The position numbers were made by a program, and so were the translations under genes. Positions 1 through 55,547 of a DNA stretch of 58,666 bases are shown here, one piece after another (within the stretch, counting starts at the first letter, position 1; each line of letters opens with the position of its first letter). The stretch is from Macrostomum lignano. Its lineage: Eukaryota. A model generated the notes under the pieces. That model ran no database searches. It saw only the letters and a list, made by a program, of their open reading frames with translations, and was not told the origin of the DNA. The DNA lies in assembly GCA_002269645.1 (NCBI GenBank), contig NIVC01004131.1:1-58666 (forward strand), given 5' to 3'.

Positions 1-3000
1 AGAGGAGAGGAGAGGAGAGAGGAGAGGAGAGGGAGAGTAGAGGAGAGGAGAGGAGAGAGAGAGGAGAGGGAGAGAGGAGAGGAGAGGAGAGGAGAGAGGA
101 GAGGAGAGGAGAGGAGAGGAGAGGATAGAGGAGAGAGGAGAGAAGAGGGGAGGAGAGGAGAGGAGAGGAGAGGAGAGGAGAGGAGAGGAGAGGGAGGAGA
201 GAGAGAGGAGAGGGAGTGTGGAGATGAGAGAAGAGGAGAGGAGAGGAGAGGAGAGGAGAGAGGAGAGGAGAGGAGAGAGAGAGGAGAGGAGAGGAGAGAG
301 GAGAGGATAGAGGAGAGGAGAGAAGAGGAGAGGAGAGAGAGAGAGTAGAGGAGAGAGGAGAGTAGAGGAGAGGAGAGGAGAGGAGAGGAGAGAGAGAGAG
401 GAGAGGAGAGGAGAGGAGAGGAGAGAGAGTAGAGGAGAGGAGAGGAGAGGAGAGGAGAGGAGAGGAGAGGAGAGGAGAGAGGAGAGTAGAGGAGAGGAGA
501 GGAGAGAGGAGAGGAGAGGAGAGAGGAGAGGAGAGGAGAGGAGAGGAGAGGAGAGGAGAGGAGAGGAGAGGGGAGGAAAGAGAGAGGAGAGGAGAGTGGA
601 GATGAGAGAAGAGGAGAGGAGAGGAGAGGAGAGGGAGAGAGGAGAGGAGAGGAGAGGAGAGAGGAGAGGAGAGGAGAGAGGAGAGGATAGAGGAGAGGAG
701 AGAAGAGGAGAGGAGAGGAGAGGAGAGGAGAGAGGAGAGTAGAGGAGAGGAGAGGAGAGGAGAGGAGAGAGGAGAGAGGAGAGGAGAGGAGAGAAAGAGG
801 AGAGGAGAGGATAGAGGAGAGGAGAGAAGAGGAGAGGAGAGGAGAGGATAGAGGAGAGGAGAGAAGAGGAGAGGAGAGGAGAGGAGAGGAGAGGAGAGGA
901 GAGGATAGAGGAGAGGAGAGAAGAGGAGAGGAGAGGAGAGGAGAGGAGAGGAGAGGGGAGGAGAGAGAGAGGAGAGGAGAGGAGAGGAGAGAAGAGGAGA
1001 GGAGAGAAGAGGAGAGGAGAGGAGAGGAGAGGAGAGGAGAGGAGAGGAGAGGAGAGAAGAGGAGAGGAGAGGAGAGGAAAGGAGAGGAGAGGAGAGGAGA
1101 GAAAGAGGAGAGGAGAGTGGAGATGAGAGGAGAGGAGAGGAGAGGAGAGAGGAGAGGAGAGGAGAGGGGAGGAGAGGAGAGAGAGAGGAGAGTGGAGATG
1201 AGAGGAGAGGAGAGGAGAGAGGAGAGGAGAGGAGAGGAGAGGAGAGGAGAGGAGAGGATAGAGGAGAGGAGAGAAGAGGAGAGGAGAGGAGAGGAGAGGA
1301 GAGGAGAGAAAGAGGAGAGGAGAGTGGAGATGAGAGGAGAGGAGAGAGGAGAGTAGAGGAGAGGAGAGGAGAGAGGAGAGGAGAGGAGAGGAGAGGGGAG
1401 GAGAGGAGAGAGAGAGGAGAGTGGAGATGAGAGGAGAGGAGAGGAGAGAGAGGAGAGGAGAGGAGAGGAGAGGAGAGGAGAGGAGAGGAGAGGATAGAGG
1501 AGAGGAGAGAAGAGGAGAGGAGAGGAGAGGAGAGGAGAGGAGAGAAAGAGGAGAGGAGAGTGGAGATGAGAGGAGAGGAGAGAGGAGAGTAGAGGAGAGG
1601 AGAGGAGAGAGGAGAGGAGAGGAGAGGGGAGGGGAGGAGAGGAGAGAGAGAGGAGAGTGGAGATGAGAGGAGAGGAGAGGAGAGAGGAGAGGAGAGGAGA
1701 GGAGAGAGGAGAGGATAGAGGAGAGGAGAGGAGAGGAGAGAAGAGGAGAGGAGAGGAGAGGAAAGGAGAGGAGAGGAAGGAGAGAAAGAGGAGAGGAGAG
1801 TGGAGATGAGAGGAGAGGAGAGGAGAGGAGAGAGGAGAGGAGAGGAGAGGGGAGGAGAGGAGAGAGAGAGGAGAGTGGAGATGAGAGGAGAGGAGAGGAG
1901 AGGAGAGAGGAGAGGAGAGGAGAGGAGAGGAGAGGAGAGGATAGAGGAGAGGAGAGAAGAGGAGAGGAGAGGAGAGGAGAGGAGAGGAGAGAAAGAGGAG
2001 AGGAGAGTGGAGATGAGAGGAGAGGAGAGAGGAGAGTAGAGGAGAGGAGAGGAGAGAGGAGAGGAGAGGAGAGAAGAGGGGAGGAGAGGAGAGAGAGAGG
2101 AGAGTGGAGATGAGAGGAGAGGAGAGGAGAGGAGAGGAGAGAAAGAGGAGAGGAGAGTGGAGATGAGAGGAGAGGAGAGAGGAGAGTAGAGGAGAGGAGA
2201 GGAGAGAGGAGAGGAGAGAGGAGGAGAGGGGAGGAGAGGAGAGAGAGAGGAGAGTGGAGATGAGAGGAGAGGAGAGGAGAGAGGAGAGAGAGGAGAGGAG
2301 AGAGGAGAGGATAGAGGAGAGGAGAGAAGAGGAGAGGAGAGGAGAGGAGAGGAGAGGAGAGAGGAGAGTAGAGGAGAGGAGAGGAGAGGAGAGGAGAGGG
2401 GAGAGAGGAGGGAGAGGAGAGGAGAGAGGAGAGGAGAGGAGAGGAGAGGAGAGGATAGAGGAGAGGAGAGAAGAGGAGAGGAGAGGAGAGGAGAGGAGAG
2501 GAGAGGAGAGGAGAGGAGAGGGGAGGAGGAGAGAGAGGAGAGGAGAGTGGAGATGAGAGAAGAGGAGAGGAGAGGAGAGGAGAGGAGAGAGAGAGGAGAG
2601 AGAGGAGAGGAGGAGAGGAGAGGAGAGAGAGAGAGGATAGAGGAGAGGAGAGAAGAGGAGAGGAGAGGAGAGAGAGGAGAGAGGAGAGTAGGGAGAGAGG
2701 AGAGGAGAGGAGAGGAGAGAGGAGAGAGGAGAGGAGAGGAGAGGAGAGAGGAGAGTAGAGGAGAGGAGAGGAGAGGAGAGGAGAGGAGAGGAGAGGAGAG
2801 GAGAGAGGAGAGTAGAGGAGAGGAGAGGAGAGAGGAGAGGAGAGGAGAGAGGAGAGGAGAGGGAGAGGAGAGGAGAGGAGAGGAGAGGAGGAGAGGAGAG
2901 AGAGGAGAGAGAGAGGAGAGGAGAGGAGAGGAGAGGAGAGGAGAGGAGAGGAGAGGAGAGGAGAGGAGAGGAGAGGAGAGGAGAGGAGAGGAGAGAGGAG

Positions 3001-3128
3001 AGTAGAGGAGAGGAGAGGAGAGAGGAGAGGAGAGGAGAGAGGAGAGGAGAGGAGAGGAGAGGAGAGGAGAGGAGAGGAGAGGAGAGGAGAGAGAGAGGAG
3101 AGGAGAGGAGAGTGGAGATGAGAGGAGA
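1..3128. repeat. Polypurine (GGAGA/GAGGA)n satellite, truncated by the window start
   Basis: The + strand is almost only G/A, with occasional GTGGAGATG, GTAG and GATAG variants and no C before about 3129. The ORFs at 1117 and 1800 are near-identical, indicating an internal duplication at 683-bp offset. Confidence 0.97.
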
Positions 3129-3164
3129 GCAGGAGAGGAGATAACTAAGAAGAGACAAACCTTG

Positions 3165-4556: not shown

Positions 4557-4650
4557 AGCCCTAAGCATAACCCTTTAACGCTAACTCTAACTGTAACTAA
4601 CTCTAACCCTAACCCTAACCCTATACGAATAACTTTAAACCCTAGCCTTA
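4557..4650. repeat. Degenerate interstitial telomere-like (CCCTAA)n tract
   Basis: CTAACCCTAACCCTAACCCTA core flanked by decayed CTAAC units. Confidence 0.6.
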
Positions 4651-5285
4651 AATCTCTAGAAATTCGACTTTTTATCAATTTGATGGCTTCATCAGGGGCG
4701 TCGCCACCGGGGGGAGGGGCAGGGGGACATGTCCCCCCCCCCCGAGTAAAAGCTATGGGGGACATGCTTTATCCCTATAAAACAAACCGATAATTGATTT
4801 TGACTGGCGATAAAGAAAACAAGGTCGCAACCCAGAATCCAGCTTTTATATTTTCTAGCCTAAACATGGGTGGAAAAGGTGGGGGGGGGGTTGGCAGAGA
4901 GATATATTCTGAGTACATTTTGCGTACAGTGAAAATAGAGAAAATAACTTTGGATGAAACAGGCGGCTAGTCTAGGCCAACTCATTTTTTGACACTCCCC
5001 CCAGATGATTTATCATTTGATTTTCAATTCGAAAAAGCGTTCCGAACATACATACATACATTACAACGTAATTACACTACGTTCGAACTTGTTGCAAACA
5101 ATGAAAAATGAAAAAACTATTTTAGCCTAACGGAGAGAGAGGTGGTTCGTTGCTTTAAGTGAGACAGTCAGCGGAGAACAAATAACCGATAGAGCCAAGT
5201 TTAAGCGCGTGAGCATGATCGATGAAGGGAAAATTTAAATGGAAGAATGACGAATAATGACACGTAACATCGCCCATAACCAAGA

Positions 5286-5642
5286 ACAACAACAACAACA
5301 ACAGAGTCTGCTGTCAGTTCGCAAAAGCAGCGTCAGATGGCGCGCTTCGAAGCTTGGGCGCGAACAAAGGCCGCACCGCCGGCAGAGTCCGGGGCGCCGG
5401 CGTCAGCCAGCAGACAGTCGACGTAGCGCCGAGTCCTCGCCTGTCCCCGCCGGTAGGGTGCCTGCAACGTAAGTAGCAGCACCTCCTGCACCGGCTCCGG
5501 ACAGTAGGCCTCGGCGCGGATGACGTGGCCTGCCAGCTGGAGTCGCCGACGGCGCAGCAGATCGCTAGGACGGGCCAGGCCGGCGCGATGATAGAGCGCC
5601 GTGTTGGTCACTCGCTCGTTGCCGATCTTGAAGGCGGCGCGC
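5286..5642 (-). mobile_element. 5'-truncated RTE-like non-LTR retrotransposon with (TTG)n tail
   Basis: RVTNTALYHRAGLARPSDLLRRRRLQLAGHVIR...RRGQARTRRYVD matches the C-terminus of RTE-type ORF2 proteins. The 3' tail reads (CAA)n on +. ACCAAGA direct repeat at 5279-5285 and 5643-5649 is a candidate TSD. Confidence 0.75.
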
Positions 5643-5760
5643 ACCAAGAGAATTATCTCAAAGCAGAAAAACAAACCTTTCCCATTACAAATTTTGGCGA
5701 GAGGCTGTCAAAAAAGTTAACAAACGAATTCGAAAGTCATGGGAAAGGTAAAAAACGGAC

Positions 5761-7295
5761 TTAGGATTGAAGCTCTAAAGGAATCAACGACTGGACTGGC
5801 CGCCTCACCCGTTCCCAGCGCCGGGAACTCCCAGCACCCGCAACGCGAAGAAGAACCGAACGGATCGCACCATCACGGCCAGGATGCACTTCCTCGACAA
5901 TACCCAATTTCCACTTGAGTTTTGGTTGTCGAGCTTCACCTGCCGGAAGAACCACTTCACCAACATTTGGCGGGCGGCGGTTAGGTTGATCCTTTAGGGC
6001 TTTCTCGCGCTGAGACTCCAAGTAGGACGTCTTTCATTGGTTACAAAACCAATCCAGAGCTGCTCTAAGCATTGTAAGCCGTTTCGAAAGCGGTAGAACG
6101 GAGTCCGCCTCACTGAGACGACTAGCTGCAATGAAATGGGACGGTGTGATGACCTTCAACCGTCGCCTGAATCCGAAGGTTACATACAACAGCGACCGAC
6201 AGTTTACCACAGCTTCGACTTCCACAGTTAGAGTGATCAACTGGTCGTAGGTAAACAGCTGTCGACCTGCAGCCTTTTTAGTGCCATCTTCACGATGCCA
6301 ATCAGCCTTTCCCAGTAACCTCCCCACCAAAAAGCTCCCTCGGGCACAAAATGCCAACAAATCTTCTTCGACGAACAGAACGACTGCAGCTCTTCTGAGA
6401 TACTAGCGCCGATCCGTTTGGCGCCTGACCGAAATGTCCGTGCATTGTCACTGACGATGGAGGGAATGCCCCTTCGAGCCACGGACCGACGCAGTGCATG
6501 CAGAAGTTGTTCGCTGTCCATCCTTGAAACAACTTCCAGATGAGAAACAACTTCGAGTTGCTGAGCAAGTGAAGAGCAGGATGTACGCCTTTTTGCTCTC
6601 ACCACCCTCCGCCGTCCGATAGAATATCGGAGCAGCATAATCCAGTCCTATTGTACGAAAAGCACGAACAGTTGACAAACGGAAGGATGGAAGCTGCGGA
6701 ACCGCACACACGGAAAACGGTCGACCTTGAAACTTCTTGCACACAACACACCCCGCCAATAACTGCTTCACACACTGTCTCGCCTTTAAAACCCAAAAAT
6801 GTTCACGAAGCTTGCATATTGTTGCCGCCACCCGGAATGCATCACAGCCACATGGTAATGACGGACAAGCAAGGTTTCGAGCGGGTGCTTTGAGGGAATC
6901 AGCACCGGATCGTTGGTGTCGAAGGGCACAGCGCCCTGCAGACGACCCGCTGACCGAACTAATCCAGTAGGATCAAGGAACAATTTGAGATCGTGCACTA
7001 ACGGCGTGCGAGGTCCAGAACCGCTGAGGCACGAAATTTCGTTCGACAATGATTTACACTCATTGTCGCAGGATGAGTGTCGCACTCATTCGCACGGCTC
7101 GCAGCACTGACTGTCCTGCCTGTAATATTTCCGTAGCCGTTAACAAGGATGGTTATTTAACAATCCGATGGCGCAAGATGCTGACAAATCTCAAGACCCA
7201 ACCAACCACTCGAGTGAGCTTGGTCCACAATGAAAATTCTGAAATCTGAATCACTTTGAGCAGAGAAGGTGAAGAAGAATCGGTACACTCCACTG
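5761..7295 (-). mobile_element. Bel/Pao LTR retrotransposon pol 3' half (integrase and C-terminal DUF5641-like region), frameshifted
   Basis: Motifs in order: FSLWTKLTRVVGWVLRFV; LFLDPTGLVRSAGRLQ; HYHVAVMHSG...FWVLKARQCVKQLLAGCVVCKK (H2C2); IGLDYAAP; LFTCSATR; RRGIPSIVSDNARTF; WWGGYWERLIGIVK; KWKLGIVEEVHPGRDGAIRSV...RRPVQSLIPLE. Several frameshifts. Confidence 0.92.
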
Positions 7296-7717
7296 TGGTT
7301 TCAATGTAGCGTCATCAGGAGCATTTGAAACGTCAGATAATTGGGGTTATATAGTATCTAATTCAGAATGGGCATCGAGGAATGAACCCAATTCTTACAT
7401 TGAAGTAAAACTTCCCGAGTCTATTCAAATTTGGAAATTCGGATTGAAAGGAACCAAAGCAGTAGGTAGTGAAATTATAAAAAATCAACCAAAAAGTTTT
7501 ATTCTAAAAGGTAGCAATAACAAGAGAGACTTTAGGAATATTTTTTTCTGCCGAAAACGCTGGTTTAGTTTCTGGAGTGATGAAGTACTTCGAAGTAGCT
7601 TCCACCGAAAAATTCTCCGTTTATAGAGTGCATATTAATTCAGCCACTGAAGGATCAACGGTTCTTATTGTTTCAGGCTTTCAACTTTATCCGATTTTAG
7701 ACATAATTGCCACATAA
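7291..7717 (+). pseudogene. Discoidin/F5-8 type C-like (galactose-binding fold) ORF remnant, Polinton-associated
   Basis: GFNVASSG...SEWASRNEPNSYIEVKLPESIQIWKFGLKG...QPKSFILKGSNN; after a 1-nt shift in a T-run it continues ...KFSVYRVHINSATEGSTVLIVSGFQLY*. The pattern (W-A-S, YIEVKL, FILKGSN, YRVHI, FQLY) fits this fold. 5' end truncated. Confidence 0.5.
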
Positions 7718-7719
7718 AA

Positions 7720-8479
7720 ATGAATGATGAAAGTGAACACGTCTATCCTGTGGTTGAGCTGCATGAAGCAGATTCGAGGGAACGGGACTATTTCAATCAG
7801 AGAAAGGGTGAAATCAAAGGCAGTATTGAATGCATTACTAAAGATCTTACAATTTATAGCAAAAAGGTAAACAAGTACAAACGACAAAGTAGCAGGATAA
7901 ATTGGATCAACATTGTGACAGGAAATGTAAGTCTCTTGGCTGCTACAGGAATTGGCATAGCGACATCGATACTGACATTGAATCCCTTAGTCATTGGAGT
8001 AGTAATCGGGGCAATGAGTGGTTTTGAAGCTGTAAAATCCATGTCATTGTTTGCAGCTGTGAAAATGCATTGCCAAAAGCAGAAGGCAAAATACATTGTT
8101 CTCAGAGATCTGGCAAATCAATACAGAGAGAGATTGTATATATACTCCCAAAAAGCAGTTGATGATTACAGAATAACTCTTGAAGAGGTTCAAGCAGCTA
8201 CTGCCATTTATTCAGAATAGAGAGAAAAGAGACAAATTGTTAGATACTTCTCTTGTGCCTCAAGGTAATAAGCAAGGGGGAAAACTAGTTAACCATTCGG
8301 AAGTCGTTGATAAAATCCTCAAAGAGAGTAGACTTGGTCATTCAGCGAAGGAAAAAATTAAAAAGGAATTGCTGGAGAAAGATCTGAGAGAAAAATTGGG
8401 TCTAGCTGATAAGCCAAAAGAGTACTCGGCAACACTCAATCTTCAATCAGATGCTCCATGTGCACCTCCCTACAATTAA
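7720..8479 (+). pseudogene. Polinton/adintovirus-type two-TM membrane protein, split into two ORFs (7720..8220 and 8180..8479)
   Basis: YPVVEL N-terminus, KKVNKYKR before a hydrophobic hairpin (NVSLLAATGIGIATSILTLNPLVIGVVIGAMSG), SQKAVDDYRITLEEV and C-terminal APCAPPY. This resembles the small membrane ORF common beside Polinton polB genes. Confidence 0.55.
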
Positions 8480-8503
8480 TATTGTATAATGTTTTTCTTA
8501 AAA

Positions 8504-9805
8504 ATGGAATGGAAAATACCAGCGGCCTCTTATGAGTTTGATCTCGACTCCGTTGAAGAAATTCACGGTTTAATCTCCCTGCAATTCTTTCCAAACATTT
8601 GATGGCTAGAGATTCAATAAAATACAGAATTTCCTTTGTTGCAGAATTTTATAAAGGAACTACCGACAAGTGGATTGAGTTCCAATATCATTCAAAGTAT
8701 CGAATTTTGTTAAATCTTTTCCAAGTGAAAACTAGTATAGAAACTACAATTCAGGATGTTCTGGATGAATTCGATGAATGGAAGGATAGTTTTAATGAAA
8801 GGGGATCGGGATATCATTTTGTTAAGTTAGTAAAGATTGTGTTGAAAGTTGTTGGCAATAATCAGTTGAAGGGAGGAACTTATATTAGAATTCCAATTGA
8901 ATCAAACGTATTAGTAAATGTTTAGAATACTAAAGACAATAGGTGCTTTCTCTGGTCTATTTTAGCCAAGCTCCATCCTGTGAAGGAACATAGATATAGA
9001 GTTGGTAAGTATACACAGTATATAAATGAAATAAACTTAGGAGACGTTGAATTTCCAGTGGACATTTGAGATATCTCTGAGATTTAAAAGTTGAACAGCC
9101 TCCATATAAATGTGTTTGGATTGAGAGATATAAATACTAAAGAGTCAATATATTCTATTCGTCTGACATAAGATTATGACAACCCCGATGTTATTGATTT
9201 ACTACCTGTTAAAAATCATTATTGTTTAATAACAGACCTAAACTTATTCCTCACGTTTAACAATAGGGTTTTTCTTTGTAGAAAATGCCTTCAGGTTAAA
9301 TACTCCGAGGATGCACTGGATAATCATAAAGCGCTTTGTGTCGACTTCAATGTGTCAATTGAAGTTCCAAAGATTGATAAGAGGATGTTAAAGTTTAAGA
9401 ACTACCACATGAGTGTAAGAAAGCCATTTGTGTTTTATGCAATATTGGATTATGTATCGATAGATAATAAATCCATAGAGCTATCAAACTAGACACTTTG
9501 TATTAGTTCCGACTATGAAAATATTATAAAATCAGATATTATTTCAAATACTACAGTGGAATCATTCGTTGAAGCCGTAATCAAAAAGTTTGAGCATATA
9601 AGAAATGAAATGGATAGATATAAACATGCAAGATTAAGTGATGACGAAGAGACTGATTACAAAGCGGCAGAACAATGTTTTCTCTGCTCAAGGCCATTTG
9701 TAGATAGTAAAAAATTTCGAGAGCATAATCACTACAATGGTAAATATCGCGGCGCAGCATGCCAATCATGTAATACCAAGGAGGGCAAGGCGAATCAAAC
9801 AGTAC
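8504..9805 (+). pseudogene. N-terminal part of a Polinton/Maverick (adintovirus) protein-primed type-B DNA polymerase with endonuclease VII-like zinc motif
   Basis: FNERGSGYHF...LKGGTYIRIP...VNV*NTKDNRCFLWSILAKLHP...NLGDVEFPV...INVFG...HYCLI...FLCRKCL...FKNYHMSVRKPFVFYA...CFLC...FREHNHYNGKYRGAACQSCN. Multiple stops and frameshifts; the catalytic palm is absent. Confidence 0.85.
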
Positions 9806-9829
9806 CGAATCAAACAGTATTCAATGGTC

Positions 9830-10493
9830 GGAAACTCCATTTTTCAAATTTTCCGAATAATGCGAAGCTTTGCAATAGGTGCAATAGGAACATTTTGTTC
9901 GTGGCGTCAGGTGCTGGCGTCAAGAAATCGTAAGTTCTTGACTTTGATTTCTTTCTTTCCGTAGCGCTCTCGCAAAATATGAGATAGTTGAAATTGTCTA
10001 CCGGTATATCTGACAGGCTCGAGTTGCGATGTATGGAAGAGTCAAACTGATCCCAAAACGACTGCCACGCCGAAATCTCCCCCGTGAATGTCGGAATTCG
10101 CCTCTTGGGAAGCTTGATCTGCGACCCGGACTCTACGGAACGACTTTTAGTCGCTATTGCCTCCTCCGGCGATTGTTGACTATTGAATATTGAAAGCTGC
10201 TTCCAGCATCTTAATGCAGCTGATACACTTCATCGAATAAGCTTGATTCTCTTCCACTTCAGCATCCAGCCCCTATCAGCGATAGACTCCTCTATGGCTT
10301 CATCCAATGCTTGCACTGCTGTCAACTTCGACTTCAGAATCTGCACAATTGCCTCCACATCCGCACGATTTGCAGCTCGACCAATATCCACGGAGAGAAG
10401 ATTGTCAGCCTTTCCAAACAGCCTTTGTGATCGCCGCGCCGATACCTGCACGCTTCCTGACTGCTGAAGATAGCTCTTTTCACTGAGAACCAT
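9830..10493 (-). mobile_element. Bel/Pao gag fragment (DUF1759-like region and zinc-knuckle remnant)
   Basis: QIKLPKRRIPTFTGEISAWQSFWDQFDSSIHRNSSLSD...FNYL is the Bel/Pao gag signature; KCSYCTYCKASHYSE follows after an apparent internal deletion. Confidence 0.8.
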
Positions 10494-11007
10494 GACGACT
10501 TGAATTGGGAGACGCTTCTAAAGCCAAGAACTCCCGACACTGAGAACTTGAAGACGGTCAGCCCAAAAAAAGAAGCAGACTGCAGGAGAACGCTACAAGT
10601 GAACACGAGAAAAATGAATGGAAAAAGCAAAAAATACGAGTAAATTTGGTAAAAGAAAACTCTAAAATTTTAGTATATGACCCCACCTTGTGATCCGTTG
10701 TGGAAATCAATAATTTCAGGGCGCTAAACCATAGCACCTGTGGCGCCAAAATGAGTGCCTGTGGCGCTAAAATGAGTGTCTGTGGCGCTAAAATGAGTGC
10801 ATGAGGCGCTAAAATGAGTGAGTGCTAACAAAACAGATTCTCAAAGTAATGCAATGCTTTGTCCCCCACCATAAAATCCATGGCGACGCCCGTGAGCTTC
10901 ATTGTCTATGGTCAAATGCTCTACTATGCAGTGGCAGGAGGTTTAATCATCATCTCGACTGCCGAAAGCAAATGTTACCGTCATGCTATCCAATTTGATT
11001 CTCCAAG

Positions 11008-11272: not shown

Positions 11273-12124
11273 GTGAGTATTACATAGTTTGTTTTTACTC
11301 GATCGATTAATCAATTTTTTCAGTACCTTGAAATGTACTCGGTGTTCTCCTCCACTGGCCTGTTTGTCCGATTCCTTTCAAGGAAATGAATAGAATCAAG
11401 GCGATCAGAAACTGATACGAAGATCCCAGCCAAAATAAACTGTTGGTGGATACTTTCGGAAGATAGATAGCGGCGCAACGGCGTGAGAGAGGCGCGCGTT
11501 CACTAATTGTCAAGCCTCTTTCGCCGCATCTCTCAAACACAGGCCCCGAGTTTCGCTTATCCCAGTCTCCTACTCTCGTCTTCTTCTTTTGCCTTGCCGT
11601 CACGGGGGGGACGGACGGAAGCAATCGAGCTCAAACGCGGAGAGCATTCAAACGAGCCCCTTAGTAAACTCGGCGCCGCTCTGTGCAGGCGGAATTCGGG
11701 TTTCGCTTCGACCGGCGAGTGAGAGAGTGCCGGTTCGAAAGGAAGTGGAGGCGGTTTTCGGACTCCAAAAACTTTCAAACTGCTCTCTTTGCCAGCCTCC
11801 TGGAAGGTTTCGAGGCTCTCGGAGGCCGGAGTAAGCAGCGTTGTTGGGCGGAAACGAAGCACCGCCTGACTGGTCAATGAGGCGCAGCGTTAACGCATGA
11901 TTAGCGAGCCAGGCAAATCAGCCTCCTTCAACTCGTTTCAGTCACTTTGCTTTCTCCGCTCTGCTTCAAATCTAATTGACCATTGCTTTCAGTTGCTTTG
12001 GTGCAAGTCTGCTTTTCCAGGTAGAGAAAAGTGCGAAATCAGTTTTTTAATGCGGAAAGAGCTCGTATTTAAAGCATCAAAAAGAGTCTTGAATACATAT
12101 AGCTAACAGCTTAAGCATGGATTG

Positions 12125-14376
12125 CAGCTCGTTGAAGAGCCTCAAGGACACGGGTAGCAGCTCATGGAAGAGCCTCAAGGACACGGGTAGCAGCTCATGG
12201 AAGAGCCTCAAGGACACTGGTAGCAGCTCATGGAAGTGCCTCAAGGACACGGGTAGCAGCTCATGGAAGAGCCTCAAGGACACGGGTAGCAGCTCATGGA
12301 AGAGCCTCAAGGACACGGGTAGCAGCTCATGGAAGAGCCTCAAGGACACGGGTAGCACATCATGGAAGAGCCTCAAGGAAACGGGTAGCAGCTCATGGAA
12401 GAGCCTCAAGGACACAGGTAGCACATCATGGAATAGCCTCAAGGACACTGGTAGCAGCTCATGGAAGAGCCTCAAGGACATGGGTAGCAGCTCATGGCAA
12501 AGCCTCAAGGACATGGGTAGCAGCTCATGGAAGAGCCTCAAGGACACGGGTAGCAGCTCATGGAAGAGCCTCAAGGACACGGGTAGCAGCTCATGGAAGA
12601 GCCTCAAGGACACAGGTAGCACATCATGGAAGAACCTCAAGGACACGGGTAGCAACTCATGGAAGAACCTCAAGGACACGGGTAGAAGCTCATGGCAAAG
12701 CCTCAAGGACATGGGTAGCAGCTCATGGAAGAGCCTCAAGGACACTGGTAGCAGCTCATGGAAGAGCCTCAAGGACACGGGTAGCAGCTCATGGAAGAGC
12801 CTCAAGGACACAGGTAGCACATCATGGAAGAACCTCAAGGACACGGGTAGCAACTCATAGAAGAGCCTCAAGGACACCGGTAGCAGCTCATGGCAAAGCC
12901 TCAAGGACACGGGTAGCAGCTCATGGCAAAGCCTCAAGGACACGGGTAGCAGCTCATGGCAAAGCCTCAAGGACACGGGTAGCAGCTCATGGCAAAGCCT
13001 CAAGGACACGGGTAGCAGCTCATGGAAGAGCCTCAAGGACACGGGTAGCAGCTCATGGAAGAGCCTCAAGGACACGGGTAGCAGCTCATGGAAGAGCCTC
13101 AAGGACACAGGTAGCACATCATGGAAGAACCTCAAGGACACGGGTAGCAACTCATGGAAGAGCCTCAAGGACACGGGTAGAAGCTCATGGCAAAGCCTCA
13201 AGGACACGGGTAGCAGCTCATGGCAAAGCCTCAAGGACACGGGTAGCACATCATGGAAGAGCCTCAAGGACACAGGTAGCACATCATGGAAGAACCTCAA
13301 GGACACGGGTAGCAGCTCATGGAAGAGCCTCAAGGACACCGGTAGCAGCTCATGGCAAAGCCTCAAGGACACGGGTAGCAGCTCATGGCAAAGCCTCAAG
13401 GACACGGGTAGCAGCTCATGGAAGAGCCTCAAGGACATGGGTAGCAGCTCATGGAAGAGCCTCAAGGACACGGGTAGCAGCTCATGGAAGAGCCTCAAGG
13501 ACACGGGTAGCACATCATGGAAGAACCTCAAGGACACGGGTAGCAACTCATGGAAGAACCTCAAGGACACGGGTAGAAGCTCATGGCAAAGCCTCAAAGA
13601 CACGGGTAGCAGCTCATGGAAGAGCCTCAAGGACACGGGTAGCAGCTCATGGCAAAGCCTCAAGGACACGGGTAGCACATCATGGAAGAGCCTCAAGGAC
13701 ACGGGTAGCAGCTCATGGAAGAGCCTCAAGGACACAGGTAGCACATCATGGAAGAGCCTCAAGGACACGGGTAGCAACTCATGGCAAAGCCTCAAGGACA
13801 CAGGTAGCACATCATGGAAGAACCTCAAGGACACGGGTAGCAGCTCATAGAAGAGCCTCAAGGACACCGGTAGCAGCTCATGGCAAAGCCTCAAGGACAC
13901 GGGTAGCAGCTCATGGCAAAGCCTCAAGGACACGGGTAGCAACTCATGGAAGAGCCTCAAGGACACGGGTAGCAGCTCATGGAAGAGCCTCAAGGACACG
14001 GGTAGCAGCTCATGGAAGAGCCTCAAGGACACAGGTAGCACATCATGGAAGAGCCTCAAGGACACGGGTAGCAGCTCATGGAAGAGCCTCAAGGACACAG
14101 GTAGCACATCATGGAAGAGCCTCAAGGACACAGGTAGCACATCATGGAAGAGCCTCAAGGACACGGGTAGCAGCTCATGGAAGAGCCTCAAGGACACGGG
14201 TAGCAGCTCATGGAAGAGCCTCAAGGACACGGGTAGCAGCTCATGGAAGAGCCTCAAGGACACGGGTAGCAGCTCATGGAAGAGCCTCAAGGACACGGGT
14301 AGCAGCTCATGGAAGAGCCTCAAGGACACGGGTAGCAACTCATGGAAGAGCCTCAAGGACACGGGTAGAAGCTCGT
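12125..14376. repeat. 33-bp minisatellite (GAAGAGCCTCAAGGACACGGGTAGCAGCTCATG)n, about 68 copies
   Basis: Tandem 33-bp period; same family occurs inverted at 47213..48000. Confidence 0.97.
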
Positions 14377-38109: not shown

Positions 38110-38820
38110 CATCATTTTCAGAATCGGTGTTGTCAGCGTTCATTTTGGCGCCGTAGGCACTCATTTTAGCGCCGCAGGCACTCATTTTGGCGCCGCAGGC
38201 ACTCATTTTGGCGCCGCAGGCACTCATTTTGGCGCCGCATGCACTCATTTTAGCGCCGCAGGCACTCATTTTGGCGCCGCAGGCACTCATTTTGGCGCCG
38301 CAGGCACTCATTTTAGCGCCGCAGGCACTCATTTTAGCGCCGCAGGCACTCATTTTAGCGCCTCAGGCACTCATTTTAGCGCCGCAGGCACTCATTTTAG
38401 CGCCGCAGGCACTCATTTTGGCGCCGCAGGCACTCATTTTGGCGCCGCATGCACTCATTTTGGCGCCGCAGGCACTCATTTTAGCGCCGCAGGCACTCAT
38501 TTTAGCGCCGCAGGCACTCGTTTTAGCGCCACAGGATCTCATTTTAGCGCCAGAGGCACTCATTTTGGCGCCGCAGGCACTCATTTTGGCGCCGCAGGCA
38601 CTCGATTGGGGGGACAAAGCATCGGCATGTCCCCCAGTAGCTTTTACTGGGGGGGGACATGTCCCCCAGTAGCTTTTACTGGGGGGGGGCATGTCCCCCA
38701 GTAGCTTTTACTGGGGGGGGACATGTCCCCCAGTAGCTTTTACTGGGGGGGACATGTCCCCCAGTAGCTTTTACTGGGAGGGGGCATGTTCCCCCTGTCC
38801 CTCCGGTGGCGACGCCCCTG
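38110..38820 (-). mobile_element. Second copy of the CAGGGGCGTCGCCA hAT-type MITE, with expanded internal 21-bp and about 31-bp arrays
   Basis: TIR ...TGGCGACGCCCCTG ends at 38820. The arm matches 4693..4770 (CAGTAAAAGCTACTGGGGGACATG) and the 21-mer GGCGCCAAAATGAGTGCCTGC matches 10740..10820. The other TIR was not found. Confidence 0.75.
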
Positions 38821-42200: not shown

Positions 42201-42539
42201 TATCTATCGCTCGCTCTTTCTCTCTATCTACCATCTATTGCCAGGACCTGCACCGGAGCGGTTACGAAAATTAGATTTCTCGGTAGTTGCACGTACTCTT
42301 TTGCACTACTTGAGTAGTCAGATTTTCGTTCGGCATGGCTGGTTCCAGCAGTTAGTTCCTCTGGATAAAAGCGCTTACCGCGCCCATTGGCTTTCCAGCT
42401 GCCTTAATCGTTTCCGGTGATCTTGTGTGCGTGCTTTCAGCTTGATTGGCTGCGGCATCTATCTTTCTCGCTATCTACTATCTATCTATATATCTATCTA
42501 TCTATCTGTCACTAAGCCAAGCAACCAAACGCCGCCTAC

Positions 42540-42759
42540 CCAGCCGAATTCCGCCCGGCACCAGGGCGCTCTTATCGCCGGGCACAGTGTTTTTATTAAA
42601 GGTGATAGCGGCCAGTTCAGCAACCCGCTCAGCCCTGGCGCCGTCCACGCCTTTCGGCCGGAGATCGACGAGTAACAGGTGGCAGTCGGTGCCGCCGGTG
42701 ACTACGCTGTGGCCTTTGGCGATCAGCGCTCGGCTCATCGCTTGCGCATTGGCCAGGAC
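42540..42759 (-). CDS. SHMT2: Serine hydroxymethyltransferase, exon 4
   Basis: VLANAQAM...[26 protein letters not shown]...[19 protein letters not shown]; canonical splice sites. Confidence 0.95.
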
Positions 42760-42939
42760 CTGGGGTTTGGGGAAGAAAACGAGCCTAGGCATATTGATGC
42801 TTGATTCCCTCCCCGATTGTTAGGCTTTAAAAACGATTCATATTTCCTTTTGACTCTACTGACAGTAGCGAAGAATAGTACACAGAATCTAAAAAGATAA
42901 AATAGGGCGAAGATTTTGGGATAAAGGGTTGAAGGGTAC

Positions 42940-43330
42940 TGTGAATGAAGGGATGCAAGGTACAGTCTGAATGAAGGTATGCAGGGTACAGTCTGAATGA
43001 AGGGATGCAGGGTACAGTCTGAATGAAGGGATGCAGGGTACAGGCTCTGCTCGTGCAATTAACGGCCTTGAGAGCCAACCCCCCAAGACGCAGTGAAGTG
43101 TACATGCCAAACGATATTATTAAGTTAGTGCCGCTGTACACTCCTGTGTGAGTGTGTGCCTGCGTACGTATCCGCGCGCTTGTATGCCTGCTCAGGGGAG
43201 TCGGCGGAATGGGCAGTAATGCCTCTCGCCGGTTGTGTGCCTATGTCGCTTAAAGTGCGCCAGGGTGCACACAACCCCCTGCCTCTAATAAAATAAAATA
43301 AACAGTCTGAATGAAGGGATGCAAGGACAT
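42940..43330. repeat. 26-bp minisatellite (CAGTCTGAATGAAGGGATGCAGGGTA)n interrupted by a SINE, SHMT intron 3
   Basis: Units on both sides of the SINE insertion. Confidence 0.8.
43047..43302 (+). mobile_element. tRNA-derived SINE, copy 3 (5'-truncated)
   Basis: Homologous to 40670..40900; ends in a (TAAAA)n tail. Confidence 0.75.
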
Positions 43331-43372
43331 CCAGCACCAAGGACCAAGGGGTCAACCAAGGTCAAGCCGAAC

Positions 43373-43843
43373 CTGCTTGGCGTAAGCTTTGAACTCTGGC
43401 GAGCGAGCCTGCAGCGCCATGGCGGCGATGCCGGCAATAGCAGCTTCGTGCGGGCCGCCCTGCAGGCCGGGGAACACGGCGAAGTTGATTCGCTCCTCAA
43501 AGTTGTACTGTCTGGGCGCCTCTTTAGCCGACGCCGGAGGCCGTTCGCCGCGGCGATAGAAAATGACGCCGGCGCGAGGGCCGCGCAAAGACTTGTGCGT
43601 GGTGCTGGTGACAACGTCGGCAAATTCGAATGGCGAAGGAATAACGCCGGCGGCCACCAGACCGCTGATGTGGGCCATGTCGGCCATCAGGACGGCGCCG
43701 AGTTCGTCGCAGAGGCGCCGAAAACGCGCGTAGTCCAATAGGCGCGGATAGGCGGTGACGCCGGCTACAATTAGGCGAGGGCGAAACAGGCGAGCGGTCG
43801 ACTCCAGCTGCTCGTAGTCTAGCAGTCCGGTGCGCTGGTCCAC
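43373..43843 (-). CDS. SHMT2: Serine hydroxymethyltransferase, exon 3
   Basis: TGLLDYEQL...[15 protein letters not shown]...[19 protein letters not shown]...[14 protein letters not shown] (PLP lysine)...[11 protein letters not shown]. Confidence 0.97.
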
Positions 43844-43991
43844 CTGAGGGGGGCGACGGTTGGAAAGCCGATGAACACCTTTGATGGCCAACCGTCAGCG
43901 GCCGTCAGCGTCAATTTGATTGCCGTCAGCGCTGGTTGTGGGGTGATGTCACCCATAGCCCTCCTGCCCAACCTTAATTGTTATTACTAAC

Positions 43992-44268
43992 CTTGTATCC
44001 AAGCGATTCAAAGTACACAGAAGTGGCCGACACCCGCTTCTGCGGGCTGGCAAAGCCGTGGGTGAGGTGGCCGCCGTCGGGCAGGTCAAGGCCCATGAAT
44101 CTGTCGTGAGGCTTGAGGAGGCCGGTGTAGGCGGCGAAGTTAGCCGGACTGCCCGAGTACGGCTGCACGTTGACACCCCAGCGCTGGGGGTCGAGGCCGA
44201 AGCAGTCCAGCAGGCGGGACTGGGCCAGAAGCTCGATTCGGTCCACCACCTCGTTGCCGCCGTAGTAC
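43992..44268 (-). CDS. SHMT2: Serine hydroxymethyltransferase, exon 2
   Basis: (R)YYGGNE...[18 protein letters not shown]...[14 protein letters not shown]...[13 protein letters not shown]. Confidence 0.97.
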
Positions 44269-44329
44269 CTGCGGCGAGGAAAGGGAGGACTGCTGATGGA
44301 ATCGGGTTCTTAGCTGGTTCTATTGAAGA

Positions 44330-47171: not shown

Positions 47172-47998
47172 GATTTATGAAGGCGTAAAAGTCGGAATTT
47201 ACTAAAAGTTCACGAGGCGAGCTGCTACCCGTGTCCTTGAGGCTCTTCCATGAGCTGCTACCCGTGTCCTTGAGGCTTTGCCATGAGCTGCTACCCGTGT
47301 CCTTGAGGCTTTGCCATGAGCTGCTACCCGTGTCCTTGAGGCTTTGTCATGAGCTGCTACCCGTGTCCTTGAGGCTCTTCCATGAGCCACTACCTGTGTC
47401 CTTGAGGCTCTTCCATGAGCCACTACCCATGTCCTTGAGGCTCTTCCATGAGCTGCTACCCGTGTCCTTGAGGCTTTGCCATGAGCTGCTACCCGTGTCC
47501 TTGAGGCTTTGTCATGAGCTACTACCCGTGTCCTTGAGGCTTTGTCGTGAGCTACTACCCGTGTCCTTGAGGCTTTGCCATGAGCTGCTACCCGTGTCCT
47601 TGAGGCTTTGTCATGAGCTACTACCTGTGTCCTTGAGGCTTTGCCATGAGCTGCTACCCGTGTCCTTGAGGCTTTGTCATGAGCTACTACCCGTGTCCTT
47701 GAGGCTTTGTCGTGAGCTACTACCCGTGTCCTTGAGGCTTTGTCATGAGCTACTACCCGTGTCCTTGAGGCTTTGTCATGAGCTGCTACCCGTGTCCTTG
47801 AGGCTCTTCCATGAGCCACTACCTGTGTCCTTGAGGCTCTTCCATGAGCCACTACCCGTGTCCTTGAGGCTCTTCCATGAGCTGCTACCCGTGTCCTTGA
47901 GGCTCTTCCATGAGCTGCTACCCGTGTCCTTGAGGCTCTTCCATGAGCTACTACCCGTGTCCTTGAGGCTTTGCTATGAGCTGCTACCCGTGTCCTTG

Positions 47999-48096
<98 letters not shown>

Positions 48097-48867: not shown

Positions 48868-50510
48868 TAGATCAAGCTGTGCCAGTGGATCAAGCTGTGC
48901 CTGTGGATCAAGCTGTGCCAGTGGATAAAGCTGTGCCTATAGATCAAGCTGTGCCTATAGATCAGGCTGTGCCTATATATCAAGCTGTGCCTATAGATCA
49001 GGCTGTGCCTACAGATCAAGCTGTGCCTACAGATCAAGCTGTGCCTGTGGATCAAGCTGTGCCAGTGGAAAAAGCTGTGCCAGTGGAAAAAGCTGTGCCT
49101 ATAGATCAAGCTGTGCCTATAGATCAGGCTGTGACTATATATCAAGCTGTGCCTATAGATCAGGCTGTGCGAGTGGATCAGGCTGTGCCTATAGATCAAG
49201 CTGTGCCTGTAGATCAAGCTGTGCCTGTGGATCGAGCTGTGCGTATAGATCAAGCTGTGCCTATAGATCAAGCTGTGCCTGTAGATCAAGCTGTGCCTGT
49301 GGATCAAGCTGTGCGTATAGATCAAGCTGTGCCTATAGATCAGGCTGTGCCTATATATCAAGCTGTGCCAGTGGATCAGACTGTGCCTATAGATCAAGCT
49401 GTGCCTGTAGATCAAGCTGTGCCTGTGGATCAAGCTGTGCGTATAGATCAAGCTGTGCCTATAGATCAAGCTGTGCCTGTAGATCAAGCTGTGCCTGTGG
49501 ATCAAGCTGTGCGTATAGATCAAGCTGTGCCTATAGATCAGGCTGTGCCTATATATCAAGCTGTGCCTATAGATCAGGCTGTGCCAGTGGATCAGGCTGT
49601 GCCTATAGATCAAGCTGTGCCTGTAGATCAAGCTGTGCCTGTGGATCGAGCTGTGCGTATAGATCAAGCTGTGCCTATAGATCAAGCTGTGCCTGTAGAT
49701 CAAGCTGTGCCTGTGGATCAAGCTGTGCGTATAGATCAAGCTGTGCCTATAGATCAGGCTGTGCCTATATATCAAGCTGTGCCAGTGGATCAGACTGTGC
49801 CTATAGATCAAGCTGTGCCTGTAGATCAAGCTGTGCCTGTGGATCAAGCTGTGCGTATAGATCAAGCTGTGCCTATAGATCAAGCTGTGCCTGTAGATCA
49901 AGCTGTGCCTGTGGATCAAGCTGTGCGTATAGATCAAGCTGTGCCTATAGATCAGGCTGTGCCTATATATCAAGCTGTGCCTATAGATCAGGCTGTGCCA
50001 GTGGATCAGGCTGTGCCTATAGATCAAGCTGTGCCTGTAGATCAAGCTGTGCCTGTGGATCGAGCTGTGCGTATAGATCAAGCTGTGCCTATAGATCAAG
50101 CTGTGCCTGTAGATCAAGCTGTGCCTGTGGATCAAGCTGTGCGTATAGATCAAGCTGTGCCTATAGATCAGGCTGTGCCTATATATCAAGCTGTGCCTAT
50201 AGATCAGGCTGTGCCAGTGGATCAGACTGTGCCTATAGATCAAGCTGTGCCTGTAGATCAAGCTGTGCCTGTGGATCAAGCTGTGCGTATAGATCAAGCT
50301 GTGTCTATAGATCAAGCTGTGCCTGTAGATCAAGCTGTGCCTGTGGATCAGGCTGTGCCTATATATCAAGCTGTGCCTATAGATCAGGCTGTGCCAGTGG
50401 ATCAGGCTGTGCCTATAGATCAAGCTGTGCCTGTAGATCAAGCTGTGCCTGTGGATCAAGCTGTGCGTATAGATCAAGCTGTGCCTATGGATCAAACTGT
50501 GCCTATGAAT
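48868..50510. repeat. 18-bp minisatellite (AGATCAAGCTGTGCCTAT)n with 414-bp higher-order repeat
   Basis: The rare variant ATCGAG recurs at 49231, 49645 and 50059 (spacing 414 = 23 units). Confidence 0.96.
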
Positions 50511-50649
50511 CAAACTACAACTGCAGATCAAGTTTGTCTAGATACAGGATTTGAACAAGGTGGTATTGAATGAATTAGCAAGGTGATAATATAGTATGGA
50601 ATATTGAGGTAACATCCTGGACCTGGCATGCATAAATTTTTGTACGCAT

Positions 50650-53600: not shown

Positions 53601-55200
53601 TACTATGATGAAATATATAAAGGTATCAATATAAAAGTTGTTACCACTAGTGCCACTAGTCCTATTTTGACTTGACCAAGCCAGTCTTTACCACCATTTC
53701 AAATGGCCTTAGTGACAATAGGCTTATCTATACATGTCAAGATTACAAAGTGCATGTTTGTATGATCTAAAGTTAACTTTATGGAGCAACTTAAAGTCCT
53801 AAATGTCAAGCTGACCACTCAAAGAATGAATCTCAAAGCTAGTCAATTGAGAGGGGCAAGTAGACTATCACCTACAACATTAGTTTCAATGAAACTATAG
53901 AGGAGATCAACTAATATAACATAAAAGACAATATAATCTATAGGCTCCAAGAAATAGATAAGCTTGAAAGCATCATGCAAGATGGCCTAAAGATAATATC
54001 CTTAATTATGCTAATTGTTACTTCCAGGTGAATTGGCAATCAGCAACTCCTTTAAACTATCTAAGACCCCTAGTTGTCTATTTAGTAAATGAGAGCAATA
54101 AAGCAGCTTTTTTGGCAACCTGCCATCTTAAGAATTGAGATAAGCCTAGAAAATGACCTAATAAAAAACATAAGAGTGCATATAAGCTTGTATAATATTC
54201 AAACAAAAGCTTATGCACTAAACTTAACTTGAGTTTTTAGGCTGATTCAATGTGGGATTCAATGTGAGATCTTCATACAAATCTCAACTAAGTTTTTAAG
54301 CCTATTCAATACAAGGTTCAATGTGTAATATCTTGCAGTAAGCCTAAATTGATTTCTTAAACCTATTTAATGCCATATTTTCTACACTAAAGTAAACTTG
54401 AGTTCTTAGGCCTATTCCATATAGAACTTAATAACGAATTCAATGTGTGATTCAATGTAGCAACTTATTAAAAGACTCATTATTGCTTGTTGCTCTCCTA
54501 TCATTTTCAACATACAAAAAGGTTCTAGATATCTATTTAGCTACTTTGGCTGATACAAATAATGGTTTTGTCAGTCTTTTGACAAATCAAGTGAGCAAAA
54601 TACAATGTAGTCTAGTGCAATAGACTAAGCTGCTTATGCGTAACATAGCCAAGTCCAAACTATTGAATAAGATAGAAGTTGCAATGTTGAAGCTATTGGA
54701 AGAACTGACATTTTGACTAAAGAAAGTTGGTAATATACAATTATTTGTTTCAAGAACTTTATTTTGGGATACAAACTAGGTAAATGGCATTATAGAAGAA
54801 GTCCATTTTTTAAGTTATACTTAGGTATATATAAACAAATATAGACACAAAGGTAAGTAAATTTGCTGAACTAGACTTTGGTCCCAATTTAGAGAACTAA
54901 CCTAAAACAAAAAGTTTGATACAAAAGAAATATATAAGCACTTGCCAATTCAATATTACCAAAATTTGTTTAACAAAAAATGCCTTTATGGCACAATTTC
55001 TACCCATGATGTGCCTTGATATTTGATAATTTAAGCAAAGCCCAACTTTTATAATACAAGAGCCTTGCTTTGCTCTTTTCAGATCAGCTATATTTTCATC
55101 AAGATTATAACTAGGGCCTGACTACAAATTTATATTTTTTTACTTTAAATAGATTGCAGTTTATAGATTTGCTATAACCAAACACAAAATTTGTATTTGC
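50650..55200. other. AT-rich block almost devoid of CpG (likely hypermutated element relic)
   Basis: About four CG dinucleotides found by eye in 4.5 kb (near 52646, 52798, 54435, 54639); CpG is common in other AT-rich parts of the window. Confidence 0.8.

Positions 55201-55505: not shown

Positions 55506-55547
<42 letters not shown>

What the first reader, a model, noticed from the sequence alone, without database searches (positions are those of the whole stretch)
4685..10902. 6.2-kb hAT-bounded composite element carrying pieces of three other mobile-element classes
Seen: TIRs CAGGGGCGTCGCCA (4693) and TGGCGACGCCCGTG (ends 10894), with 8-bp flanks GGCTTCAT/AGCTTCAT. Both arms belong to a MITE family that recurs at 38110..38820. 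Inside lie an RTE LINE tail, Bel/Pao gag and integrase with no recognisable LTRs, and a Polinton segment with no termini of its own. Established: 8-bp TSDs and CAG-starting TIRs are hAT hallmarks. Inference: either a pack-type hAT unit that moves retroelement and DNA-virus cargo as one piece, or serial nesting into a small MITE followed by deletions.
Basis: partly seen in the sequence, partly recalled or inferred. Interest (0 to 1): 0.8.

Follow-up and report, generated by a model that had tools for sequence, protein, structure and literature searches.

The report
Decayed hAT-type element stuffed with transposon debris
A small non-coding DNA transposon in a flatworm (Macrostomum) genome has swollen to 6.2 kb with broken pieces of three other mobile elements, which is an ordinary result of nesting and decay in a repeat-rich genome, with no sign that it moved as one unit.

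Summary
The terminal inverted repeats (13/14 matching) sit at 4693 and 10894. The 8-bp flanks match 7/8. Both arms match a short copy at 38110-38820.

The same termini, with 8-bp target duplications, bound 0.2-0.8 kb elements on about 14 unrelated metagenome contigs. This is therefore a real, widespread hAT-like MITE family.

The window is from Macrostomum lignano or a close relative. The interior holds:
- a 5'-truncated RTE-like LINE copy that ends in its own tail and is 98-99% identical to other M. lignano copies, so it is young;
- a Bel/Pao gag start and a Bel/Pao integrase end, on the same strand and in the right order;
- between them, in opposite orientation, a 2.7-kb AT-rich Polinton-like fragment.

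All genes are broken or truncated. There is no LTR pair and no Polinton terminus.

Nothing from the interior recurs in the window, and all other family members seen are short. The best reading is nesting plus deletion inside an immobile MITE, as documented for maize Ds elements. Movement of the composite as a unit is neither supported nor excluded, because the genome itself could not be searched. Interest is low.

The parts
4685..4692 (.). Left copy of the 8-bp target-site duplication (GGCTTCAT)
   Evidence: 7/8 identical to 10895-10902.
4693..4779 (+). Left arm of the non-autonomous hAT-type element. It holds the TIR (4693-4706), a G/C palindrome (4716-4743) and about 1.5 copies of the family's 32-bp subrepeat.
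   Evidence: The first 18 nt are identical to the 5' ends of short elements on metagenome contigs.
4780..5286 (.). Unassigned non-coding stretch of about 0.5 kb. It could be a Bel/Pao LTR remnant or other filler.
   Evidence: No Pfam hit, no repeat in the window, and no similarity to 10494-10718 beyond shuffles.
5287..5647 (-). RTE-like LINE fragment, 5'-truncated. It holds the last 104 codons (intact), a short 3' UTR and a (TTG)6 tail.
   Evidence: 98-99% aa identity to M. lignano proteins, and every alignment stops at 5647; the relative P0177 has Exo_endo_phos + RVT_1. One search shows the tail sequence.
5648..5763 (-). Unassigned 116 bp downstream of the Bel/Pao pol stop codon
   Evidence: no homology found.
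5764..7250 (-). Bel/Pao pol 3' part: the pre-integrase linker, Integrase_H2C2, rve and DUF5641, up to the stop codon. It is broken by at least four frameshifts, at least two in-frame stops and one short in-frame tandem duplication. Everything upstream (protease, RT, RNase H) is absent.
   Evidence: Pfam hits in alternating frames; frame reading; duplication.
7297..7705 (+). Polinton-like block, gene 1: the 3' part of a fibre-like gene. It is 5'-truncated, aligning to residues 178-312 of a 314-aa protein of L122, and has one frameshift.
   Evidence: the L122 protein carries a tail-fibre motif.
7720..8476 (+). Polinton-like block, gene 2: a ~246-aa protein whose weak Pfam matches (SLATT_1, 2TM effector) and hydrophobic stretch suggest two transmembrane helices. 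It has one frameshift.
   Evidence: 66-72% identity over 98% of the query to P0146-P0149.; weak SLATT_1 hit.
8557..9972 (+). Polinton-like block, gene 3: roughly the first 470 codons of a protein-primed DNA polymerase B. It has about six in-frame stops, no frameshift was seen, and it is 3'-truncated.
   Evidence: hits carry PF03175 + PF02945; collinear with L124 and L125, which also carry rve, a DJR-like capsid domain, Adeno_PX and Pox_A32.
9981..10493 (-). Bel/Pao gag 5' part. It starts at an ATG, has one in-frame stop, and is 3'-truncated after the first 34 of 148 DUF1759 positions.
10494..10716 (-). Unassigned 223 bp upstream of gag (a possible leader). It is too short to hold a complete LTR plus leader.
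10717..10894 (+). Right arm of the hAT-type element. It holds 4-5 copies of the 21-bp subrepeat (10717-10820), a subterminal region and the TIR (10881-10894).
   Evidence: Its last ~33 nt resemble the 3' ends of the short relatives.
10895..10902 (.). Right copy of the target-site duplication (AGCTTCAT)
38110..38820 (-). Short cargo-free copy of the same family. It has one TIR (38807-38820), 5.3 copies of the 32-bp repeat and 22 copies of the 21-bp repeat. Its other TIR is missing.

Best explanation
A non-autonomous hAT-type element (a MITE of a widespread family) inserted here and made an 8-bp target duplication. It encodes nothing. Such an element can move only if a transposase made elsewhere recognises its TIRs and its G/C-palindromic subterminal boxes; this step is inferred from hAT biology, not shown here.

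After insertion it served as a passive landing site. A Bel/Pao retrotransposon copy came to lie in its middle. That copy's central part (the rest of gag, protease, RT, RNase H) was replaced by a 2.7-kb internal fragment of a Polinton-like element. Its LTRs were lost by deletions that also trimmed the MITE's internal minisatellites. Later, an RTE-like LINE added an ordinary 5'-truncated copy.

The result is a dead, single-copy mosaic, not a vehicle that carries cargo.
For: - TIR, TSD and family membership are confirmed.
- Short relatives with the same asymmetric ends have 8-bp TSDs. Of the 14 eukaryote-like contigs, three match 8/8, five 7/8, four 6/8 and two 4/8. Chance TIR pairs on GC-rich contigs score 1-2/8.
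- The LINE piece has the hallmarks of its own insertion mechanism: a native 3' tail, 5' truncation exactly at 5647 against every full-length relative, and an intact reading frame. It is 98-99% identical to other M. lignano copies. By contrast, the host's TSD has a mismatch and the other cargo genes carry many breaks.
- The gag and integrase pieces lie on the same strand in the correct order, as expected from one former copy.
- The only other family copy in the window and all relatives found are 0.2-0.8 kb with no cargo.
- No interior sequence recurs in the window.
- The host genome is more than 50% repeats, with 21% LTR retrotransposons (PMC5730564).
- The same outcome is documented for maize Ds1/Ds2 elements, enlarged to 0.8-24 kb by nested LTR retrotransposons (PMC3260210).
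Against: - Simple nesting predicts element termini, and these are absent. There is no LTR pair, no Polinton TIRs, and no TSDs around the Bel/Pao or Polinton pieces. At least three or four separate deletions must therefore be assumed.
- The junctions are tight: 9972-9981 and 7250-7297.
- A 7-bp repeat flanking the LINE piece is not significant; 22% of shuffles reach that length.
- The age argument rests on very few sites. The unusual right TIR may be native to this subfamily.
- The genome could not be searched, so 'single copy' is shown only for this 58.7-kb window.
Confidence: 0.6

Rival explanations
1. The cargo, at least the Bel/Pao-Polinton mosaic, was already between the arms when the element last transposed. 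It would have been acquired as filler DNA, by template switching during repair of an excision gap or by end-joining capture, and then moved as one 6-kb hAT unit in the pack-type manner.
For: - The Bel/Pao and Polinton pieces are internal fragments without their own termini, joined at tight junctions. Capture explains this more economically than several deletions.
- The arms retain both TIRs and a TSD.
- Filler DNA and Pack-hAT elements are documented in maize (PMC3260210; PMC8903248).
Against: - No second copy of any junction was seen.
- All other family members found are short.
- The two Bel/Pao pieces keep the order and strand of one copy, which independent captures would not predict.
- The LINE piece is clearly a later, ordinary insertion.
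- The cargo is not host-gene sequence, which is what defines Pack-TYPE elements.
Confidence: 0.2
2. One or more internal junctions are assembly artefacts, that is, chimeric joins of repeats in a very repeat-rich, partly duplicated genome.
For: - The genome is hard to assemble because of repeats and duplicated chromosomes (PMC5730564).
- Composition changes abruptly at 7250-7300 and 9900-9980.
- The window is packed with minisatellites.
Against: - The two arms are complementary halves of one family member and carry a matching TSD. A mis-join would not create that.
- The Bel/Pao halves are mutually consistent.
- There is no direct evidence of mis-assembly.
Confidence: 0.07
3. The two arms are remnants of two separate family copies that happen to flank a transposon-rich stretch, and the flank match is a coincidence.
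For: - The family has truncated copies; the one at 38110-38820 lacks a TIR.
- The TSD is imperfect (7/8).
Against: - The chance of a 7/8 or better match at the fixed flanks is about 4e-4.
- The arms are a 5' half and a 3' half in the correct mutual orientation, and together they account for nearly the whole short copy.
Confidence: 0.03

Closest known systems
Maize Ds1/Ds2/Ds-like non-autonomous hAT elements with nested insertions or filler DNA (Du et al. 2011, PMC3260210)
   Same: Short, non-coding hAT-type elements with TIRs and 8-bp TSDs. Some copies are enlarged many-fold by LTR retrotransposons or other DNA lying between intact ends. Many sit in repetitive DNA and decay.
   Different: The host is an animal (a flatworm). 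The cargo here is a hollowed-out Bel/Pao copy plus a Polinton-like fragment and a LINE copy, without LTRs. No autonomous partner is known.
Pack-TYPE transposons, including Pack-hAT (Gisby and Catoni 2022, PMC8903248)
   Same: TIR- and TSD-bounded non-autonomous elements with foreign DNA inside.
   Different: Pack-TYPE elements are defined by captured host-gene fragments, and several families have been shown to move and multiply. Here the cargo is mobile-element debris and there is no evidence of a second copy.
Bel/Pao LTR retrotransposons (five families reported in M. lignano, PMC12801592)
   Same: A gag with DUF1759 and an integrase with H2C2, rve and DUF5641 domains.
   Different: Only the two ends of the coding region remain. 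Protease, RT, RNase H and a recognisable LTR pair are absent.
Polinton/Maverick-type elements and related virus-like contigs (L123, L124, L125)
   Same: The N-terminal part of a protein-primed polymerase B with the Endonuclease VII-like motif, two neighbouring accessory genes, and about 33% GC like the relatives.
   Different: Only a 2.7-kb internal piece is present. There is no integrase, capsid, ATPase or protease gene, no TIRs and no TSD.
RTE-clade LINEs
   Same: A C-terminal tail of an endonuclease + RT single-ORF protein, a very short 3' UTR ending in a trimer repeat, and 5' truncation.
   Different: Clade assignment rests on architecture and tail features (my own knowledge of RTE), not on an RT phylogeny.

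Membership tests
hAT superfamily (non-autonomous member) | 8-bp target-site duplication | tested here: met
   7/8 here. Relatives with the same termini show 8/8 in three cases and 7/8 in five, while chance TIR pairs show 1-2/8.
hAT superfamily (non-autonomous member) | Short TIRs beginning YARNG (CAG-type) | tested here: met
   CAGGGGCGTCGCCA on the left and CACGGGCGTCGCCA on the right. Relatives begin CAGGGGCG at both ends.
hAT superfamily (non-autonomous member) | Weak target consensus nTnnnnAn | tested here: inconclusive
   Among eight TSDs read, A at position 7 occurs in about five and T at position 2 in about two (by eye).
hAT superfamily (non-autonomous member) | An autonomous partner with the same termini that encodes a hAT transposase (DDE core plus hAT dimerisation domain) | tested here: not met
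   No transposase ORF lies next to the termini in the window or in the metagenome loci examined. The host genome could not be searched, so the superfamily call rests on TIR and TSD only.
MITE | Short (under about 0.8 kb), non-coding, with TIRs and TSDs, in many copies | tested here: inconclusive
   The short copy is about 0.71 kb and relatives are 212-796 bp. Copy number in the host genome is not testable here.
Pack-TYPE (Pack-hAT) | Captured fragments of host genes between the TIRs | tested here: not met
   All identifiable cargo is LINE, Bel/Pao or Polinton-like sequence.
Pack-TYPE (Pack-hAT) | Several copies with the same cargo at different sites (evidence of movement) | not testable with these tools
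   There is one copy in the window. Junction-spanning ORFs are not on record. The host genome is not available.
Bel/Pao LTR retrotransposon | gag (DUF1759) and an integrase with a DUF5641 C-terminus | tested here: met
Bel/Pao LTR retrotransposon | Pao-type protease, RT, RNase H and a pair of LTRs | tested here: not met
   No such domains were found and there is no direct-repeat pair. This is a fragmentary copy only.
Polinton/Maverick | Protein-primed DNA polymerase B | tested here: met
   The N-terminal part only. Hits carry PF03175 + PF02945, and the part is collinear with L124 and L125.
Polinton/Maverick | rve integrase, double-jelly-roll capsid genes, packaging ATPase, protease, long TIRs, 6-bp TSD | tested here: not met
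   All are absent from the window. They are present in the relatives L124 and L125. This is a fragment only.
RTE-clade LINE | A single ORF with an AP-type endonuclease and RT, and a very short 3' UTR ending in short tandem repeats | tested here: met
   The relative P0177 has Exo_endo_phos + RVT_1 with this tail at its C-terminus. The 3' UTR is under 50 nt and ends in (TTG)6.
RTE-clade LINE | Placement within the RTE clade in an RT phylogeny | not tested
   The RT domain is absent from the window copy and no reference set was at hand.

The most novel reading that the evidence does not exclude
The 6.2-kb mosaic was assembled elsewhere and carried here as one unit by a hAT transposase. That would be an animal 'pack-type' hAT vehicle able to move fragments of a virus-like Polinton and of a retrovirus-like Bel/Pao element around the genome.
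Probability: 0.12. Interest if true: 0.55.

Novelty: new member of a known kind. Interest (0 to 1): 0.2.

Why it matters
As it stands, this is a textbook picture of how small DNA transposons in a repeat-rich genome become graveyards for other mobile elements, and it matters mainly for repeat annotation of Macrostomum.

Two by-products may be more useful:
- The terminal sequence CAGGGGCGTCGCCACCGG, with its adjacent G/C palindrome, defines a MITE family found with 8-bp TSDs on many unrelated environmental contigs.
- The Polinton-like fragment links a flatworm genome to AT-rich virus-like contigs at 66-72% protein identity.

Only if the same junctions turned up at other sites would the composite become an interesting animal example of cargo transport by a hAT element.

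Tried and rejected
- Exact-product look-ups of five window ORFs, including two that span internal junctions, found nothing. No second genomic copy could therefore be fetched.
- A paralogous empty site was sought in the window and in the loci; none was found.
- LTR remnants were sought between the unassigned flanks; similarity did not exceed shuffles.
- Internal TIRs and long direct repeats were sought; there are none.
- A candidate TSD around the LINE copy (TCTTGGT) is not significant, since 22% of shuffles reach that length.
- An autonomous hAT partner was sought next to the termini on metagenome contigs. The neighbouring ORFs are ordinary genes (a phosphorylase and an MFS transporter) or have no domain.
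- I briefly considered that the 7297-8467 stretch is phage DNA, because L122 has tail-fibre and endonuclease VII hits. I rejected this because L123 also encodes a Polinton-type polymerase, and relatives of the adjacent polymerase piece sit in elements with integrase and a capsid domain.
- IMG/VR holds no relative of the 246-aa protein.
- A literature search for the TIR string gave nothing.
- Rfam and tRNA scans gave nothing.
- The SHMT exon did not identify the organism, with a best identity of 62-67%. The LINE tail did.
Full report
**Observation.** CAGGGGCGTCGCCA lies at 4693-4706. Its inverted partner lies at 10881-10894 with one mismatch (CACGGGCGTCGCCA). The 8-bp flanks are GGCTTCAT and AGCTTCAT. 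With up to two mismatches the 14-mer occurs three times in the window, against 0.22 expected from shuffles. The third occurrence (38807-38820, minus) is the end of a short copy. A 7/8 or better match at two fixed 8-mers has a probability of about 4e-4 (my calculation).

**The family in the window.** Self-comparison aligns 4692-4767 with 38821-38753. It aligns 10720-10851 with the 21-bp array and the stretch 38110-38140. The two arms are therefore the 5' half and the 3' half of one family member, in inverted orientation relative to the copy at 38110-38820. That short copy joins a 32-bp subrepeat array (5.3 copies) almost directly to a 21-bp array (22 copies). Its second TIR is missing. In the 6.2-kb element the arrays are small, with about 1.5 and 4-5 copies. 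A few bases of the central joint are not accounted for, so at least one inner junction is not a clean insertion junction.

**The family elsewhere.** A scan of metagenome contigs with the first 18 nt returned many chance hits on GC-rich bacterial contigs. It also returned about 14 contigs of moderate GC on which two convergent copies of the terminus bound elements of 183-796 bp.
- Their 8-bp flanks match 8/8 on L025, L077 and L099.
- They match 7/8 on L029, L034, L041, L059 and L107, and 6/8 on four more. The remaining two such contigs (L033, L084) match only 4/8.
- Five chance pairs on GC-rich contigs match only 1-2/8, which serves as an internal control.
- The ends are asymmetric in the same way as in the window. 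One end runs CAGGGGCGTCGCCACCGGGG followed by a G/C palindrome. The other end runs ...CCCCC...AAAATCCGTGGCGACGCCCCTG, compared with the window's ...CCCCCACCATAAAATCCATGGCGACGCCCGTG.

This establishes a real and widespread MITE-type family with 8-bp TSDs and CAG-type TIRs, as expected for hAT. I found no transposase-encoding partner, so the superfamily call rests on TIR and TSD alone.

**Organism.** The LINE tail matches proteins of Macrostomum lignano at 94-99% identity. The window therefore comes from that flatworm or a very close relative. Its genome is more than half repeats, with 21% LTR retrotransposons and 15% simple and tandem repeats (PMC5730564). Five Bel/Pao families are reported (PMC12801592). 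The window fits this picture, with about 40 tandem-repeat arrays.

**Interior, from left to right.**

(1) 4780-5286 is non-coding and unassigned.

(2) 5287-5647 (minus) is the 3' end of a LINE.
- Every alignment stops at 5647, including those to full-length relatives that carry more than 800 residues upstream.
- The last 104 codons are intact.
- The stop codon is followed by fewer than 50 nt of 3' UTR and a (TTG)6 tail.
- A 56%-identical relative has an AP-endonuclease domain and an RT domain, with this tail at its C-terminus.
- These are the marks of an ordinary 5'-truncated, target-primed LINE insertion of RTE type. At 98-99% identity to other copies it is the youngest component.
- A 7-bp direct repeat abuts both ends but is not significant.

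(3) 5764-7250 (minus) is the end of a Bel/Pao pol.
- It holds the linker before the integrase, Integrase_H2C2, rve and DUF5641, up to the stop codon.
- It carries at least four frameshifts, at least two in-frame stops and a short in-frame duplication.

(4) About 7297-9972 (plus) is an AT-rich block, at 30-40% GC against about 50% on either side. It holds three gene pieces.
- The first is the 3' part of a fibre-like gene, with one frameshift.
- The second is a ~246-aa protein gene, probably with two transmembrane helices (weak 2TM-effector Pfam hit), with one frameshift. It is 66-72% identical to four metagenome proteins.
- The third is about the first 470 codons of a protein-primed polymerase B, with about six in-frame stops and no frameshift seen.
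- Contig L123 carries both the 249-aa homologue and a Polinton-type polymerase.
- The closest relatives of the polymerase piece lie in AT-rich elements that also have an rve integrase, a double-jelly-roll capsid domain, Adeno_PX and an A32-like ATPase.
- The block is therefore a Polinton-like internal fragment. No other part of such an element is in the window.

(5) 9981-10493 (minus) is the start of a Bel/Pao gag. It begins at an ATG, has one in-frame stop, and is cut off after the first 34 of 148 DUF1759 positions.

(6) 10494-10716 is unassigned.

There is no LTR pair, no internal TIR, and no similarity between the unassigned stretches.

**Reading.** The gag start and the integrase end lie on the same strand in the right order. 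They most simply derive from one Bel/Pao copy whose middle was replaced by the Polinton-like block in opposite orientation, with junctions at 7250-7297 and 9972-9981. The LINE copy is a later, normal insertion.

These facts favour nesting followed by deletions inside an immobile MITE:
- the short relatives and the cargo-free copy 27 kb away;
- the lack of any repeat of interior sequence in the window;
- the imperfect TSD.

This outcome is described in detail for maize Ds elements. There, 0.4-kb Ds1 copies reach 0.8-24 kb through nested LTR retrotransposons, and many Ds-like elements carry filler DNA and no longer move (PMC3260210).

The weak point is that Bel/Pao and Polinton termini are missing, so several deletions must be assumed. 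Capture of internal fragments during break repair, in place or before a last transposition, would explain this with fewer steps. Pack-type hAT elements exist in plants (PMC8903248), but they are defined by host-gene cargo and by multiplied copies, and neither is seen here.

**What could not be done.** The host genome is not in the searchable DNA collections, and exact-product look-ups failed. Assembly error cannot be excluded either.

**Verdict.** The hAT-type boundary is supported. The composite is most likely a decayed nest (confidence about 0.6) rather than a cargo-carrying unit (about 0.2). It is a new member of a known kind, and interest is low (0.2).

Noticed in passing
L025, L029, L033, L034, L041, L059, L073, L077, L082, L086, L099, L107 (metagenome contigs); window 4693-4710: The terminal 18 nt CAGGGGCGTCGCCACCGG and the adjacent G/C palindrome are conserved on short TSD-flanked elements from many unrelated environmental samples. 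This points to an old or horizontally spread MITE family whose transposase source is unknown.
   Followed up: partly
window 38140-38603 and 38626-38795: Inside the short family copy, the two internal subrepeats are expanded to 22 copies of 21 bp and 5.3 copies of 32 bp. The 6.2-kb copy has 4-5 and about 1.5 copies. The MITE seems to seed minisatellites.
   Followed up: partly
window 1-3141 and 4560-4625: The window begins with 3.1 kb of (AGAGG)n. A degenerate CCCTAA (telomere-type) run lies about 60 bp left of the element, so the region may be subtelomeric or hold an interstitial telomere-like tract.
   Followed up: no
window 42535-44282 (minus): A multi-exon serine hydroxymethyltransferase gene. 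The exon I queried (43355-43837) is only 62-67% identical to the best database proteins; another exon reaches about 80%. It is either a divergent paralogue or a poorly sampled lineage.
   Followed up: partly
window 12124-14374 and 47219-48003: The same 33-bp minisatellite occurs as two large arrays in inverted orientation 33 kb apart, about 90% complementary.
   Followed up: no
L122 and L123 (ENA metagenome assemblies ERZ27315222 and ERZ27299524): These are AT-rich, tightly packed contigs. They combine a phage-like tail-fibre motif, endonuclease VII genes, the conserved ~246-aa probable two-helix membrane protein and, on L123, a Polinton-type polymerase. They may be free or integrated Polinton-like viruses related to the flatworm fragment.
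   Followed up: partly
P0151, P0152, P0155 (M. lignano UniProt models): Several M. lignano gene models fuse this LINE tail to unrelated domains (papain protease, PHD/CXXC fingers, 'transmembrane protein'). This looks like annotation run-through into transposon copies.
   Followed up: no
window 50500-56000: A long stretch at 28-34% GC with no long ORFs and no similarity to the Polinton-like block. Its nature is unknown.
   Followed up: no
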